A DNA stretch of 64,000 nucleotides from NCBI GenBank assembly GCA_013265495.1, contig MU058009.1:4344739-4408738 (forward strand). The letters are read 5' to 3'. This document shows positions 25,781-46,629 of the stretch, piece by piece. Position 1 is the stretch's first letter. Each line of letters starts with the position of its first letter. A program made the translations under genes and the position numbers. This DNA comes from Vicugna vicugna (lineage: Eukaryota). The notes under the pieces are model-generated. The model was not told the DNA's origin. It saw only the letters and a program-made list of their open reading frames with translations, and did not search any database.

Positions 25781-25915
25781 CTGTGGGCTTTGTGAGCGAA
25801 GACGAGTACCTGGAGATCCAGGGCATCACGCGGGAGCAGTCGGGGGACTACGAGTGCAGCGCCTCCAACGACGTGGCTGCACCGGTGGTCCGGAGAGTCA
25901 AGGTCACGGTGAACT
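25781..25915 (+). CDS. NTM: NTM coding exon, second half of Ig domain 2 (135 nt, phase 1/1)
   Basis: Acceptor ccggcAG at 25779-25780 and donor ACT|GTAAGT at 25916. Encodes (A)[44 protein letters not shown](Y), including the Ig D-x-G-x-Y-x-C motif. Confidence 0.97.
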
Positions 25916-27788: not shown

Positions 27789-27909
27789 ATCCACCATACA
27801 TCTCAGAGGCCAAGGGTACAGGCGTCCCCGTGGGACAGAAGGGGACACTGCAGTGTGAAGCCTCCGCAGTCCCCTCGGCAGAGTTCCAGTGGTACAAGGA
27901 CGACAAGAG
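27789..27909 (+). CDS. NTM: NTM coding exon, first half of Ig domain 3 (121 nt, phase 1/2)
   Basis: Acceptor ttcttcctgcAG at 27787-27788 and donor GAG|GTAGGA at 27910. Encodes (Y)[39 protein letters not shown](R). It is absent from the ORF track because it has no start codon of its own. Confidence 0.97.
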
Positions 27910-32948: not shown

Positions 32949-33100
32949 GCTGGTTGAAGGGAGGAAGGGGGTCAAAGTGGAAAACAGACCTTTCCTCTCG
33001 AAGCTCATCTTCTTCAACGTCTCCGAGCACGACTACGGGAACTACACTTGCGTGGCCTCCAACAAGCTGGGCCACACCAACGCCAGCATCACGCTGTTCG
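32949..33100 (+). CDS. NTM: NTM coding exon, second half of Ig domain 3 (152 nt, phase 2/1)
   Basis: Acceptor tgtgtctcAG at 32947-32948 and donor TCG|GTGAGG at 33101. Encodes (R)[50 protein letters not shown](G), with N-glycosylation sequons NVS, NYT and NAS. Confidence 0.97.
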
Positions 33101-33637
33101 GTGAGGCTGAGGCAGGAAGGAGGAGCTGGGCAGAGGGAGCCAGGGAGGAAGACAGAGGAGGGGGCGGGGGAGGACCAGTCCATGTGTGAACGTAGACGCG
33201 GGGAGAGGGGAACACGTGGAAAATAATGGGTTTTATTCTGAGAGGAGACATCCAGAGACAGGAGAGAACTATCTGGGGACACTGAGGTGACCCTGCGGTT
33301 TCCCCCGTCAGTATGTCCTGAACCGACCGTGGGGGTTACCACCGGATCTAATAGGGACCAGAAACAGGTGCTGTTTCAGTGCTGGATCCCTGATGAGTGT
33401 AAAATGTCCCTGTTTCTGAGACCTTTTCTGGCCGCTGGGACGTAAGAGAAACTGAATTATAGTCATAAAAGTAGACTCGTGGGCCTTGGGATCCTGAAAA
33501 ACACTCGTGCTAGAGGGAGAATTCACACAGAAAACGGGCGCTTCCCCGGTTCTCCGTCTGTGTCCAGGGGTGTCAGCGGGCTGGACTACGATGCTGTCTG
33601 TCCACGCGAGCCGCCATCCTGACAGAAGTCACACAAC

Positions 33638-33715: not shown

Positions 33716-36104
33716 TCCATGACACATCCCGCGGCTGTGCTGGTGCCAGAAACTCGCGAGGGGAGTGACTGAGAAGCTGCCCGGTGGGCCCACGGCCGGC
33801 ACTTCTGTGGGTAGAACACTTGCCGGCAAGTGAGTCTGGACGCCCGTCTGCGCCCCCGGCGTCTGTGACGGCTTTCATCCCGGGATGGGCGCGGGTTCTC
33901 CCCTCAGCCCGTGGGGTTGATCTCTGGCAGCTTCGGGGGCCAATCCCTCAAGGCCACAGTGAGATCCGTTAGCTGGGAATCTTTCAAATCTGTTCCCCTG
34001 GCCGCCCACGTCAGCCAGCACTCTTGAGTGGCATGGGGGGAAGCTGAGGAGGTGAGCAGGTGATTGGCAACAACTTAGATCCATTTATTCTGAGGACTCC
34101 CGGTCGTTCCAGAGCTGTGAGCACCCCGCACTCACCCCGCCCCGCGGATGCCGCGGCACGGCGGGTCCAGGCCCAGCCTGCCCCGAGTGGCCGCCTGTGC
34201 TGCTCCGCGGCCCCACCTCTGCTTCCAGGTCCCTTTCTGCCCCGCTCTTCCCCAGCACGGAAACAAAGCCCGGCTTTACCCAGCAGGGCTGGGACGGGGG
34301 CGGTGCTGCCCTCGACCCCAGAGCTGGTGGATCCGACCGGGCAGAGCTGTGACCAGAGTGAGCGATCTGTCTGATGGCTCCCGCGCGGGCACAGTCACAG
34401 TTGCCCCTCGCATTTGTCAAGACTTCGGGCTTTTTGGCAGATGTCAGTCTGTGAGAGCAGAGAGCCAGGATTAGAAAGGGGCAGCCCCCTCCACCGTTCG
34501 CCTTGCAGATCCAAGGCTCTGGCCCGCTTCCCTGACCTTCACCCTCCGCCTTCCTCCTGCCTGGAAATCGTCTCCCTCCTCCTCTGACCTCTTTGCTCTT
34601 CCGAATCAGATGCACGAAGCAGCTTCGCGCTGGCTTTATCGCTGCTGTCTAATGCCCTGGCCTCGTCCCCTGAGCCGTCTAATGATGAGAAGAGGGAGCA
34701 GAGCAACTTTCAGAGGGAAATCGCTGGCGTTTATGGCAGGCAAGCCAGTGAAGCGTGTGTCATAAATCTGCTCCTCTGGGCAGCCCCACGTGGGCCATGC
34801 AGACCTCCACCCCCCCACCCGGTCTATCAGCACCCACCTCGGGCCGTTCCTGCCAGCGTTCTGGGCCCCAGGGCTCTCCAAAGACACGTGTTGGAAAATG
34901 ATAGTAGGTTTGCACAGAAGCTCAGAAGGACTGGGTCAGACGAAGGCGGGTGGGGTCCACGCCGGGACGCTCTCTGGGTCTCAGAGCCCTTAGGTGCTAA
35001 ATCCCTGAGAGGGAGGAAGAGTTTGGAGAACTTTCCAAATTTAATCAAACAGAAACCAGGCTTTTGGCCTCCTTTGAGAGAGCGTTTCCGAGGGGCCGTC
35101 ACAGCGATGCCGCCTGGGTGACAGGTGCCACCGAGCTAGTGAAACCCCTGAGTGCGCAGACGGGCCTCCCGCCCCGCTGGCTCTCGCTGCGGCTGGTCCA
35201 GGCATCGCGGCCCCTAAACTCCTAATCAACGGACGCCACCCGCTATCAGGAAGGACAGATACACACGTGTTCGGGAGCCCCCTACCGTCATCTCCCAGTG
35301 TCGGAAGACCCTCCACCCAGAGCCAGCCAGCCGAGTGGGGCAGAGCGGAAAGCAGCCTGTGCTTCGTTCGAATGCGCGAGCTTTGTGGTGAAACTTCCCC
35401 CGCAGCACCACAGAGCCAGCCGAACTGTCATCATCTCCCACCACCCTGCCCACACGCTGCCGCCACATGACCTAATGTTGAAAAGTGAGGGATGCTGGTG
35501 CCAGGAGACCCATGGTGGTCCGTATCCTGGAGGTACTTAAGTCACATGGGGCGGGGGTGGTCCTTCCCGTCAGGAACCGCTAGGTTTTGAGCACCTGGTC
35601 CCTAAGACCGCAGAGACTGCCGGAGACCAGGAGAGCCCTGCCCTGTGATCTGTGATCCGAGTCACAGAGCTTCCGGGGTGTCCTGCTCCATCCAGGATGC
35701 CGCGAGATCCGAAATTCCTGAGCTTGGTCTCCCAGCGTGAGACAAGGTGGGTCGTGGGTGTGACACACGTCTCGCCTGGAAGGGGAGTTTGGCCCTTGAT
35801 TACCATATCAGGACCCTGACTCAGCACCAGCCAAGGGTCAGTCCTCCCGCGCTGAGCGCGCTCCGGCGACCAGCTCCCTCGCCTTCCAACCACGAGTGCC
35901 GCCACTCGCACCGAGCGCTCAGCATCCCGCACGCTGCATCTCATCCTCCCACCGCTGGTTTCTGCGTCTTCCTTCACGTACCCACCCCTCCAGAAGTGCT
36001 TGTGAAAGGTGGTGTACAAACTATGTATGGCAAATACATAGCTGCTGTATATAACACGTGTTTGTTTTCATTTTTCTCTCCTGTGTGTCCCTCATCCGAC
36101 TTAG

Positions 36105-36140
36105 AGCTAAGTGAGCCCACAAGCTCATCTTTGCTGCAAG
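36105..36140 (+). CDS. NTM: NTM alternative 36-nt microexon (ELSEPTSSSLLQ), in frame
   Basis: Pyrimidine tract and ttAG at 36103-36104, donor AAG|GTCAGT at 36141. Length 36 nt, phase 1/1. The peptide resembles the ELNEPTSSTLLQ insert I recall from human NTM isoforms. Confidence 0.82.
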
Positions 36141-40306: not shown

Positions 40307-41156
40307 GTAGAATTGACAGGCAGAATTGTAAGCTACCATCACGGTGGTTTGATAGTCTCTGTGGCAGGGTTTTCCGTCCTCTGCATCGAGGGTGGGCACA
40401 CGCAGAGGCGCCCAGCTGAAGAGGGAACTGGGAGATTGGAGAGCATCCCGCTTCCGGCCGGTCAGCAGGACAGCCCTTCGGATCGTCCTGAGAGCTTGGA
40501 GGTGGTGAAGCGGGGGTCCTTCCCGGGCTAGCCAGCAGGGAGGGGCTGGCGCCAGATGGCCACGGCAGCTCTCAGCAGCGCAGACACAGGTCTTACTGCC
40601 TTGGGTTACCCCAGAGTGACGAGGCCTCCGGGCCAGCCTTCTGCGGGCTGACTGCTCAGAAGCCGGGTATCGAGGCCTCGGCCCCTCTGGGACTTCCTCT
40701 CCCAGCGTTTCTAAAATGCGTAGATGGGTGCCGGTTAACACAGCCTGGGCGCCAGCACTCAGGTTGCTACAGGACGGTCCGTTTGAATCAGCCAGTTTTA
40801 TGCTAAAGCCCGCAGACTCCAGCTAAGCAAGGAGGTTGCTCTGCAGAGACGTCTTCGTGGGCCTGGGCCCCCGGCTGTGTGGTATGGGCGTCCCCTGTGG
40901 AGACAGGTGGGGGTGCGGACTCCCTCTGGGTCAGGGATCCACTGTGAGGACCATTCACATCCTTCCCCAGCCCCCACCTCAGTGGAGGGCGCCACGTCCC
41001 AGCGAGGCCGTGGTGTGAGGATGCGGGCTGGGCTGTGCTCTGGACAGCAGGGGCTGGGCCGGGAGTGCCGGCTCCTCCCCAAAAACCATCGGAGGGTGAA
41101 GCGGGTGTGCCCTGCGGCTTTCTGCCTTGACAGTGGCAGTGTTTCATTTCTTTTAG

Positions 41157-41188
41157 AAGTGAAAAGCATGCTCTGAGCCCTGGGAAAG
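41157..41188 (+). other. NTM: Orthologue of the NTM 33-nt alternative exon (human EVKTTALTPWK), here 32 nt and frameshifted to EVKSML*
   Basis: gtttcatttcttttAG|AAGTGAAAAGCATGCTCTGAGCCCTGGGAAAG|GTTGGT. It aligns to the recalled human AAGTGAAAACTACAGCCCTGACCCCTTGGAAAG with a 1-nt deletion, and has an in-frame TGA at 41174-41176. Confidence 0.78.
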
Positions 41189-42559
41189 GTTGGTATGTCT
41201 CCCGTCCAGGCAGCTGCTGCCTTGGTGGGATGGGGCACCCAAAACTCTTTGCCTCCTTCCAAGATGCCTTCCCTTCAGCGCTAACCCCAGGAAGCAGCCC
41301 AGTGGGAACCACTCTGACCTTGGGCCGGCCTGGCGTCAACTTAGCTTAACCGTCGTCAAGGCCCCAAGGGCACCCGATTCTCCCCGGGTGCTTCCTCCCC
41401 TTCGGTAGGTCTAACTTGTCTCTGCTGCCAAGACTAATGAGCGCCCATCAGGGCCCAGAATAGCCCCGCGTCTGGGCCCCGCTGCGCCGGGCCTGCCTCT
41501 CGCCCTGCACACGGATGCTCTAACGCAGTGATCTCCTCAGATCCTGGCCTTGTGTGCTGGCCTTCGCTCACCCCGCTCTCCCCCCCTCCGCCTAACTTGG
41601 AGCCGGAAGGGACGTGTCAGGAGGGAGGGGAAGGGGGACGGAAGGGGGAGGTTCTGGGTGAGTCACTTGGCTACAAATAAAATGCTTCTTATTTGAGGCT
41701 TTCATTCTTGCCAGATGTTTCCAATGGATAATTGACACTCATCACAGTTTCCCGGGACCCTAACTGTCCTGGTAATTAGTCTCTTTCGGCCTCCACAGCT
41801 CTCTAATGAGTCAGAGGCAACCGAGGCCTGCGGCGCAGAGTGGAGGCCAGGCTGGGTGGGGACAGAGGCCTCGTCTGTGTGGCCGTGTCCCCGGACAGGC
41901 GGGCTGATGTTCACTCTGGCCAGTGTGGGCGCAGAAGTGTCCTTGCTCCAGGATCCTGGGGTTCACCCGGCACAGAAGGTCCTCCTCTCGAAGTGGTCTT
42001 CCCGTGCTGGTCGGCGGGGGGTGGCCTGTGCGGTGCCCAACGTCTCCTGTGGCCTCATTCTTTTTTCTCCCTTACTCTCCAGGGACGTGTGAGTTACACA
42101 AAGCGACGGCTCCGGGTTAGTGGGAAGGAGATTGTATTTGGAGGCAGAAGTCAGGGGACCTTGGGGAAATCATTTAAGTTCCCTGAGGTTGAGAGTCCAC
42201 ACATTAGACAGAGGATAATCATCTTCATGTCATGCAGGAGGGCTTAAGGGGCTGGAACCCCTTCCCAGCTGCGAGCGCTCCACCTGGAATTCTAATCAAC
42301 GAGGTTCTTCCGTGTAGAGCTTCCCTCAACCACAGGAATTTTCAGGGACTTTTATTGGAAATCATTAGAAAAAGACAGGAAGGGTGTTTTTGAAGAGAAA
42401 ATTGAGGTAAAGCAGAAGGCAAGATAAAAAAAAGAATGTTTTGCTTTGTTTTGAGTCTGTCTTCTTTTTTTTTCCCTCCAAGTAGAACCATAAGAGAAAG
42501 GAAAACACAGAGACAAAGTAAATATGGACTCATCAGCGTGGGTCACAATGTTCTGGTCC

Positions 42560-46522: not shown

Positions 46523-46629
46523 GCCCCGGCGCCGTCAGCGAGGTGAGCAACGGGACGCCCCGGAGGGCAGGCTGCGCGCGGCTGCTCCCGCTCCTCGTCT
46601 TGCGCCTCCTCCTCCTCCTCGAGTTTTGA
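46523..46629 (+). CDS. NTM: NTM terminal coding exon, GPI-anchor signal peptide
   Basis: Acceptor ctctctccgcAG at 46521-46522. Encodes (G)[34 protein letters not shown] with TGA at 46627-46629, followed by TGTGAGTGCCAC as in the NTM 3' UTR start I recall. Confidence 0.95.

What the first reader, a model, noticed from the sequence alone, without database searches (positions are those of the whole stretch)
41157..41192. Frameshifted NTM microexon becomes a stop cassette predicted to escape NMD: a lineage-specific secreted neurotrimin?
Seen: the exon keeps intact splice sites (ttttAG, AAG|GTTGGT, and a second donor GTATGT at 41193) but is 32 nt and reads E-V-K-S-M-L-TGA (41174-41176). The stop holds with the NAGNAG acceptor and either donor. 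Knowledge: the human exon I recall is 33 nt (EVKTTALTPWK) and in frame; stops less than about 50-55 nt upstream of the last junction escape EJC-dependent NMD; a secreted isoform of the chicken IgLON CEPU-1 (CEPU-Se) has been described. Here the stop is only 12-16 nt before the last junction. Inference: inclusion gives all three Ig domains with no GPI signal, a soluble IgLON decoy, so one deleted base may have turned a stalk-length switch into a membrane-versus-secreted switch. Alternatives: a dead pseudoexon or an assembly indel.
Basis: partly seen in the sequence, partly recalled or inferred. Interest (0 to 1): 0.72.

Follow-up and report, generated by a model that had tools for sequence, protein, structure and literature searches.

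The report
Frameshifted neurotrimin alternative exon in a camelid
In this camelid genome an ancient 33-base alternative exon of the brain adhesion gene neurotrimin has lost one base and now carries a stop codon, so including it should give an anchor-less, probably secreted protein, but I could not show that the exon is used or check the lost base in reads.

Summary
The window holds the 3' end of neurotrimin (NTM) from a camelid very close to alpaca. The exon at 41157-41188 is 32 nt, has an intact acceptor and donor, and reads EVKSML-stop. The stop lies 12 nt (16 nt with the second donor) before the last splice junction.

In 102 of the 111 sampled NTM-type proteins that carry this exon, from frogs to primates, it is exactly 11 in-frame codons. 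A DNA alignment with deer, marmot and a mouse-like rodent shows exactly one missing base in the camelid. The conserved intron flanks and the donor are kept.

Inclusion would therefore give an mRNA that the 50-55 nt rule places outside nonsense-mediated decay. Its product has the Ig domains and no GPI signal.

Inclusion, mRNA stability and secretion were not tested. An assembly error or a rare allele is not excluded (about 15%).

Anchor-less NTM forms are not new: chicken CEPU-Se, human RefSeq isoform 16, alpaca isoform X1 and ADAM10 shedding. This is a modest, plausible, unproven lineage-specific variant.

The parts
25781..25915 (+). NTM exon for the second half of Ig domain 2 (..[45 protein letters not shown])
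   Evidence: tblastn of alpaca NTM X1 (P0214) and Bos NTM against the window; splice boundaries read from the sequence
27789..27909 (+). NTM exon for the first half of Ig domain 3 ([39 protein letters not shown])
   Evidence: 100% match to P0214; boundaries
32949..33100 (+). NTM exon for the second half of Ig domain 3, ending ..NASITLF|G in phase 1; carries the camelid signature LVEGRKG
   Evidence: matches PDB neurotrimin chains 6DLF and 6U7N
34609..35121 (+). Alternative terminal exon used by alpaca NTM isoform X1 (170-aa tail DARSSF..TAMPPG, then stop); gives a different GPI-less product
   Evidence: 98.2% aa identity to P0214 residues 271-440; acceptor ..ccgaatcag|AT and stop read
36105..36140 (+). 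Alternative exon A, 36 nt, in frame, ELSEPTSSSLLQ; intact and identical in peptide to bovids
   Evidence: same peptide in Bos and Capra isoforms
41112..41156 (+). Conserved upstream intron flank of exon B: branch-point-like CTTGAC, pyrimidine tract TTTCATTTCTTTT, and the first AG of the NAGNAG acceptor
   Evidence: alignment A1 with deer, marmot and Scotinomys; only 4 camelid-specific changes in 45 columns
41157..41188 (+). Alternative exon B, 32 nt instead of 33; reads EVKSML then stop in the incoming frame
   Evidence: one-base gap against three mammals; exactly 11 codons in 102 of 111 exon-B-bearing proteins
41174..41176 (+). In-frame TGA created by the frameshift, 12 nt before donor 1 and 16 nt before donor 2
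41189..41233 (+). Donor GTTGGTATGT (identical to deer), with a second GT at 41193, and the conserved downstream intron flank (..CAGGCAGCTGCTGCCTT..)
46523..46629 (+). Coding part of the last exon: [35 protein letters not shown] then stop, i.e. the GPI-attachment signal, followed by the 3'UTR
   Evidence: homologous to the [13 protein letters not shown] tail of all sampled NTM proteins

Best explanation
This is a real, lineage-specific one-base deletion in alternative exon B of neurotrimin. Exon B is a stalk exon between Ig3 and the GPI signal that has been 33 nt and in frame since before tetrapods. The window comes from a South American camelid or a very close relative of alpaca.

Shown: the exon is 32 nt. 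Its acceptor, donor and conserved intron flanks are intact. In the only incoming phase it terminates after EVKSML. The stop is 12-16 nt from the last junction.

Inferred: because the splicing signals are unchanged, the exon is still included in part of the transcripts, as in pig, mouse and other mammals. The exon-junction complex of the last junction sits about 24 nt upstream of it, before the stop, so a terminating ribosome has already removed it and the mRNA is not an NMD target. Translation gives the signal peptide, three Ig domains and EVKSML, with no GPI signal. Such a protein should be secreted as a soluble IgLON ectodomain able to bind IgLON partners. Whether selection favours this output or merely tolerates it is unknown. 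I think a tolerated by-product is more likely than an evolved switch.
For: Exon length, stop position and splice sites. Gene identity and species: 100% match to alpaca NTM X1 over the Ig3 exons with the camelid-only K-to-R change, and 98.2% over the X1-specific exon. Conservation of exon B: 111 of 174 sampled NTM/CEPU-1-type proteins carry it, and 102 of those have exactly 11 aa. Examples are pig AVRTTALTPGK, ruminants EVKTTTLPPGK, cetaceans EVKTTALTPGK, primates and rodents EVKTTALTPWK, birds and turtles EETTTALTPWK, and frogs. One-base gap in the DNA alignment A1, with the donor identical to deer and both flanks kept. The missing base is not in a homopolymer (context CAT-GC), which argues against a typical assembly indel. 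Exon-B-containing isoforms of mouse-type rodents and pig are also held in Logan assemblies of sequencing runs, so the exon is used in real transcripts elsewhere. NMD position rule: PMC1854916 abstract. Soluble NTM ectodomains ending just after Ig3 have been solved (PDB 6DLF, 6U7N). CEPU-Se and ADAM10-shed soluble IgLONs are described in PMC10606101.
Against: The 31-mer shares of 0.84-0.94 in at least 19 DNA runs cannot resolve one base. No camelid transcript-derived protein turned up. All three camelid-specific substitutions in the exon are conservative or silent in the old frame; with the base restored it would read like the bat and pangolin EVKSTAL[TS]P.K. The deletion is therefore either recent or an artefact. 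Other first-reader notes report several apparent frameshifts and tandem duplications in conserved genes of this assembly, which slightly raises the prior for assembly problems.
Confidence: 0.45

Rival explanations
1. Dead relic. The deletion is real, but the exon is now effectively skipped, or its product is made in negligible amounts. In that case camelids have simply lost exon B as a coding option and use only the no-insert and exon-A forms. There is no biologically meaningful secreted isoform.
For: The camelid exon carries 4 lineage-specific changes in 33 columns. That is no fewer than its intron flanks (4 in 45 each), whereas the two rodents have 0 in the exon against 3-6 per flank. This fits relaxed constraint on the exon. 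Exon A stays perfectly conserved in peptide. No camelid isoform with an EVKSML end was seen in any protein search. No UGC near the acceptor and no GCATG within 120 nt downstream, so there is no recognisable enhancer motif to vouch for inclusion.
Against: The acceptor, pyrimidine tract, branch-point-like motif and donor are all intact, and the donor is identical to deer, where the exon is annotated as included. A long-dead exon would be expected to lose them. The substitution pattern suggests the frameshift is recent, so splicing regulation has probably not changed. The absence of camelid isoforms from the searches is uninformative, because only cluster representatives and a few members are visible.
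Confidence: 0.3
2. Artefact or private allele. The missing base is an assembly or consensus error, or a rare or heterozygous variant of the sequenced animal, and the species normally has a 33-nt in-frame exon reading about EVKS-x-ALSPGK.
For: With one base added the exon reads as a perfectly ordinary orthologue, and every residue is seen in other mammals. There is no independent camelid sequence for this base. Several other apparent frameshifts or duplications in conserved genes are noted in this assembly by first readers, all unchecked.
Against: The gap is in a non-repetitive context (CAT-GC), not a homopolymer. Expected fixation of small indels on a roughly 60-My branch under weak constraint far exceeds the per-base error rate of modern polished assemblies (inference). 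The neighbouring sequence is held at 84-94% of sampled 31-mers by many independent DNA runs of several related organism labels, so the region is not a generally bad patch.
Confidence: 0.15

Closest known systems
CEPU-Se, the secreted isoform of chicken CEPU-1, the avian NTM orthologue (Lodge et al. 2001, Mol Cell Neurosci 17:746; cited in PMC10606101 and PMC10084454)
   Same: It is from the same gene family and orthologue. An alternatively spliced mRNA gives three Ig domains without a GPI signal, i.e. a soluble IgLON.
   Different: CEPU-Se is an experimentally shown protein. Here nothing is shown beyond the DNA. The route here is a one-base frameshift inside the conserved exon B that creates a stop. 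I could not read the CEPU-Se paper to compare the exact splice event.
Exon B of NTM/CEPU-1 in other vertebrates (33 nt; EVKTTALTPWK and variants)
   Same: It is orthologous by position (between exon A and the GPI exon) and by sequence. It shares the NAGNAG acceptor, the GTTGGTATGT-type donor and the conserved intron flanks.
   Different: It is one base shorter and terminates translation instead of lengthening the stalk by 11 residues.
Other annotated GPI-less NTM isoforms: human RefSeq isoform 16 (ends ..LFGETVL), alpaca X1 (170-aa tail from window 34609-35121), and hyena X4, langur X6 and mole X2 (last exon read in the +1 frame, ending ..VLM)
   Same: All end after Ig3 without the GPI signal and are made by alternative 3' processing of the same gene region.
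   Different: They arise by intron read-through, an alternative terminal exon or frame-shifting upstream exons, not by a mutated exon B. Most are computational models.
PTCs in the last 50-55 nt of the penultimate exon that escape EJC-dependent NMD and yield truncated proteins (rule summarised in PMC1854916)
   Same: The geometry is met: the stop is 12-16 nt from the last junction.
   Different: Those cases are mostly disease or tumour mutations in constitutive exons. Here the stop sits in a naturally alternative exon, so only part of the mRNAs would carry it.
Ectodomain shedding of IgLONs by ADAM10 and other metalloproteases (PMC10606101)
   Same: It yields the same kind of end product, a soluble three-Ig NTM ectodomain.
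   Different: Shedding is post-translational and present in all mammals. The route proposed here is co-transcriptional and lineage-specific.

Membership tests
Neurotrimin (NTM, IgLON family) gene, 3' part | Ig2 and Ig3 exons matching NTM rather than its paralogues | tested here: met
   100% identity to alpaca NTM X1 over Ig3a and Ig3b. The best PDB matches are neurotrimin 6DLF and 6U7N at E about 3e-30, against OPCML at 2e-20.
Neurotrimin (NTM, IgLON family) gene, 3' part | Terminal exon encoding the GPI-attachment signal (GPGAVSEV.. plus a hydrophobic tail) | tested here: met
   Window 46523-46629, homologous to the tails.
Neurotrimin (NTM, IgLON family) gene, 3' part | Signal peptide, Ig1 and the first half of Ig2 | not testable with these tools
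   These exons lie upstream of the window. The alpaca gene spans about 820 kb.
Conserved NTM alternative exon B | Position between exon A and the GPI exon, with sequence and flank homology | tested here: met
   Alignment A1 and blastn hits at 73-79% around the exon.
Conserved NTM alternative exon B | 33 nt, in frame, 11 codons | tested here: not met
   32 nt with an in-frame TGA. 102 of 111 exon-B-bearing proteins have exactly 11 aa.
NMD-escaping premature stop (50-55 nt rule) | [quoted passage not shown] | tested here: met
   12 nt (donor 41189) or 16 nt (donor 41193).
NMD-escaping premature stop (50-55 nt rule) | No further intron downstream in the 3'UTR | not tested
   Assumed from the usual NTM gene structure. 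No transcript data could be laid.
NMD-escaping premature stop (50-55 nt rule) | Transcript stable, unchanged by NMD inhibition | not testable with these tools
   Needs cycloheximide or UPF1 experiments.
Poison (NMD-coupled) exon | Stop more than 50-55 nt upstream of a downstream junction | tested here: not met
   The stop is 12-16 nt from the only downstream junction.
Secreted IgLON isoform (CEPU-Se type) | Open reading frame ends before the GPI signal | tested here: met
   The translation ends ..TLFEVKSML, or ..LLQEVKSML with exon A.
Secreted IgLON isoform (CEPU-Se type) | The mRNA isoform exists | tested here: inconclusive
No camelid isoform appeared in the protein searches.
Secreted IgLON isoform (CEPU-Se type) | Protein found in medium or body fluid | not testable with these tools
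   Needs expression or proteomics.
SRRM4-type neural microexon | Length of at most about 27-30 nt and a UGC motif close to the acceptor | tested here: not met
   The exon is 32-33 nt, and the nearest upstream TGC is at -34.

The most novel reading that the evidence does not exclude
Camelids, or only the South American ones, have turned a stalk-length exon more than 400 My old into a regulated switch between membrane-anchored and secreted neurotrimin. Under this reading the frameshifted exon is kept by selection, included in a cell-type-specific way in brain, and supplies a soluble IgLON that modulates IgLON adhesion independently of ADAM10 shedding.
Probability: 0.1. Interest if true: 0.6.

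Novelty: new variant of a known kind. Interest (0 to 1): 0.35.

Why it matters
If the exon is still included, this would be a clean natural example of a single-base loss in a conserved alternative exon re-purposing it. The exon would go from adding 11 stalk residues to choosing between a GPI-anchored and a soluble adhesion molecule, with the stop placed exactly where NMD cannot see it. That is of some interest for the evolution of alternative splicing and for IgLON biology, where soluble forms are known to act on neurite growth. It would not change the field: soluble NTM is already made by shedding, and GPI-less isoforms are already known or annotated. If the exon is skipped, or the base is an assembly slip, it is an ordinary exon loss or an artefact.

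Tried and rejected
1. Read-level check and junction counting. 
2. Independent camelid DNA.
- The alpaca NTM locus is too long to be served.
- The Camelus-like protein P0216 is not on record.
- An exact 23-mer scan of metagenome contigs for host DNA found nothing.
- An exact look-up of the ATG-started ORF that ends at the new stop found nothing.
3. Camelid transcripts through protein databases.
- The ORF across the exon's 3' half has no homologues.
- The search with the Ig3b exon gave 20 fragments, none with the camelid LVEGRKG signature.
- A listing of ten clusters showed no camelid member.
4. Frame rescue. No AG upstream or inside the exon gives an entry that both avoids the TGA and restores the GPI frame. 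The internal AG at 41165-41166 gives a 22-nt exon that shifts the last exon into the ..VLM frame. The second donor and the NAGNAG acceptor keep the stop. Read-through or selenocysteine would still leave the last exon out of frame.
5. Poison-exon reading: rejected on geometry.
6. SRRM4- or RBFOX-type motif support for inclusion: none found.
7. Literature on exon B usage. Searches for the peptide and for NTM microexon or alternative-exon papers gave nothing specific. The structure paper PMC6609445 is not held.

Full report
WHAT IS THERE

The + strand of the window carries the 3' part of a mammalian neurotrimin (NTM) gene. The exons are:
- Ig2 second half, 25781-25915
- Ig3 first half, 27789-27909
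- Ig3 second half, 32949-33100, ending ..NASITLF|G in phase 1
- alternative exon A, 36105-36140 (36 nt, ELSEPTSSSLLQ)
- the exon in question, 41157-41188
- the last exon from 46523, whose coding part (to 46629) is the GPI-attachment signal [35 protein letters not shown]

The Ig3 exon matches the solved neurotrimin chains 6DLF and 6U7N best.

The species is a camelid very close to alpaca. Alpaca NTM isoform X1 (P0214) is 100% identical over both Ig3 exons, including a K-to-R change (LVEGRKG) seen in no other species sampled. Its peculiar 170-residue terminal exon is found at window 34609-35121 with 98.2% identity. A second, Camelus-like protein (P0216) is only 85-91% identical there.

The exon is 32 nt. 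It lies behind a strong pyrimidine tract and a TAGAAG (NAGNAG) acceptor. It is followed by AAG|GTTGGT, with a second GT four bases on.

In the only possible incoming phase it reads GAA GTG AAA AGC ATG CTC TGA. The stop survives use of the second acceptor or the second donor. The stop ends 12 nt before donor 1 and 16 nt before donor 2. No alternative AG restores both an open exon and the GPI frame.

IT REALLY IS ONE BASE SHORT

I collected NTM/CEPU-1-type proteins with one profile-free search of representatives, two word-indexed searches and one cluster listing.

Of 174 proteins in which both the end of Ig3 and the GPI exon can be recognised, 111 carry exon B. In 102 of these it is exactly 11 residues:
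- primates, rodents and many others: EVKTTALTPWK
- cetaceans: EVKTTALTPGK
- ruminants: EVKTTTLPPGK
- pig: AVRTTALTPGK
- bats and pangolins: EVKSTAL[TS]PWK
- marsupials: EEKTTVMTPWK
- birds and turtles: EETTTALTPWK
- frogs and caecilians: related 11-mers

Shark OPCML-like genes have a 12-residue version.

The exon is therefore at least as old as tetrapods. Among the sampled proteins that carry it and run on into the GPI exon it is always in frame, as it must be for such proteins to be annotated.

I fetched genomic loci for three species: Cervus hanglu (L001), Marmota monax (L002) and Scotinomys teguina (L004). I then aligned the exon with its flanks (alignment A1).
- The camelid has a single one-base gap (CAT-G against CACAG) and three substitutions of its own.
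- About 45 nt of upstream intron are strongly conserved and retained. These include a branch-point-like CTTGAC/CTTAAC, the pyrimidine tract and the NAGNAG.
- About 45 nt of downstream intron are also strongly conserved and retained.
- The donor GTTGGTATGT is identical to that of deer.

Read in the old frame, the 3' part of the camelid exon still spells ..ALSPGK, the counterpart of ..ALTPGK.

WHAT FOLLOWS IF THE EXON IS INCLUDED

This part rests on established rules, not on anything shown here.

The exon-junction complex of the last junction is deposited about 20-24 nt upstream of it. That is upstream of this stop, so a terminating ribosome will already have displaced it. Stops within 50-55 nt of the last junction are not NMD substrates (PMC1854916).

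The product would keep the signal peptide and three Ig domains and end ..TLFEVKSML, or ..LLQEVKSML with exon A. It would lack the GPI signal.

NTM ectodomains that end just after Ig3 have been solved (6DLF, 6U7N). Soluble IgLONs produced by ADAM10 shedding are biologically active, and a secreted splice form of the chicken orthologue, CEPU-Se, has been described (PMC10606101 and PMC10084454, citing Lodge et al. 2001).

Exon-B-containing isoforms of pig and of mouse-type rodents are also held in Logan assemblies of sequencing runs. The exon is therefore used in real transcripts of other mammals, including the nearest sampled relative group.

WHAT I COULD NOT SHOW

The run search found at least 19 DNA runs from five related organism labels. 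They hold 84-94% of the sampled 31-mers of 40600-41800. It also found weak RNA holders of the 3'UTR, none labelled as brain.

As a result there is no read-level confirmation of the missing base and no junction evidence. K-mer shares cannot resolve one base.

All other routes to a second camelid sequence or a camelid transcript failed:
- the alpaca locus is too long to be served
- P0216 is not on record
- a metagenome scan was empty
- the protein searches returned no camelid fragments
- an exact look-up of the ORF ending at the new stop found nothing

WEIGHING THE READINGS

For a real deletion:
- The gap is not in a homopolymer.
- It is accompanied by neighbouring substitutions.
- On a long branch, small indels in a weakly constrained stalk exon are far more likely than a consensus error at one given base.

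For caution:
- All three camelid substitutions are conservative or silent in the old frame (two Thr-to-Ser changes and, on one alignment of the gap, a third-position change).
- With one base restored in thought, the exon would look like a perfectly normal orthologue.
- This means the frameshift is either young or not real.
- Other first-reader notes on this assembly list several apparent frameshifts and tandem duplications in conserved genes (unchecked).

I put artefact or private allele at about 0.15.

Given a real deletion, the intact signals favour continued inclusion. However, the exon shows no fewer lineage-specific changes than its flanks (4 in 33 columns against 4 in 45), whereas the two rodents have none in the exon. 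I also found no enhancer motif. I therefore put continued inclusion with a soluble product at about 0.45 and an effectively silent relic at about 0.30. An adaptively maintained switch is the most novel reading left open, at about 0.1.

COMPARISON WITH WHAT IS KNOWN

The element is a member of the conserved exon B by position and homology, but it fails that exon's defining property of 33 nt in frame. It meets the geometric criterion for NMD escape and fails that of a poison exon. It would work like CEPU-Se, but membership of that kind needs an mRNA and a protein that I could not test.

GPI-less NTM isoforms made by other routes are already annotated:
- human RefSeq isoform 16, which reads through the Ig3 donor and ends GETVL
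- alpaca X1, from the exon at 34609-35121 of this very window
- isoforms of hyena, langur and mole that read the last exon in the +1 frame and end ..VLM

The idea of a secreted neurotrimin is therefore not new. What is new is the route, a frameshift in an ancient alternative exon, and its restriction to one lineage.

VERDICT

It is a new variant of a known kind, of modest interest (0.35).

Noticed in passing
window 34609-35121 (+): This is an intact alternative terminal exon with a good acceptor (..ccgaatcag|AT). It encodes the 170-aa tail of alpaca NTM isoform X1, which gives another GPI-less product. In the Camelus-like protein P0216 the same region matches only in pieces and in different frames, so the tail is probably not conserved coding sequence. 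Bat (Myotis brandtii) NTM P0003 has a tail starting DHIRSSF.., which resembles DARSSF.. and hints at an old cryptic exon here.
   Followed up: partly
window 46523-46629 (+): The camelid GPI-signal tail differs from the very uniform mammalian one: ..[19 protein letters not shown] against ..GC[IV]WLLPLLVLHLLLKF. It has W-to-R and H-to-R changes, is two residues longer and has an acidic residue next to the end. Whether GPI attachment efficiency changes was not examined.
   Followed up: no
proteins P0298, P0300, P0215 (hyena X4, langur X6, mole X2): Several annotated NTM isoforms in other mammals read the last exon in the +1 frame and end ..APxxQ[VI]LM. The same frame in this window would give ..RVLM. 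Frame-shifted, GPI-less models of this gene are thus common in annotations.
   Followed up: no
window 33101-33186 (+): Read-through of the Ig3b donor stays open for 29 codons ([10 protein letters not shown]..). The human RefSeq isoform 16 (P0332) is of this read-through type and ends GETVL.
   Followed up: no
window 41155-41159 and orthologous sites in L001, L002, L004: The TAGAAG tandem acceptor of exon B is identical in camelid, deer, marmot and Scotinomys. One lizard isoform with a 10-residue exon B (ETTAAQTPWK) fits use of the second AG.
   Followed up: partly
window 41709-41745: A filter of read laying refuses this stretch. The tool says this also happens by chance and is no evidence of anything. 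Anyone repeating the read check should lay stretches that stop short of it.
   Followed up: no
same genome, other windows (notes s1-246782, s1-243739, s1-228763, s1-225283): First readers report several frameshifting tandem duplications and deletions in conserved genes (TPO, HCN1, DCUN1D2, SIM2) of this assembly. If some prove to be artefacts, the assembly's indel quality should be weighed for this finding too.
   Followed up: no
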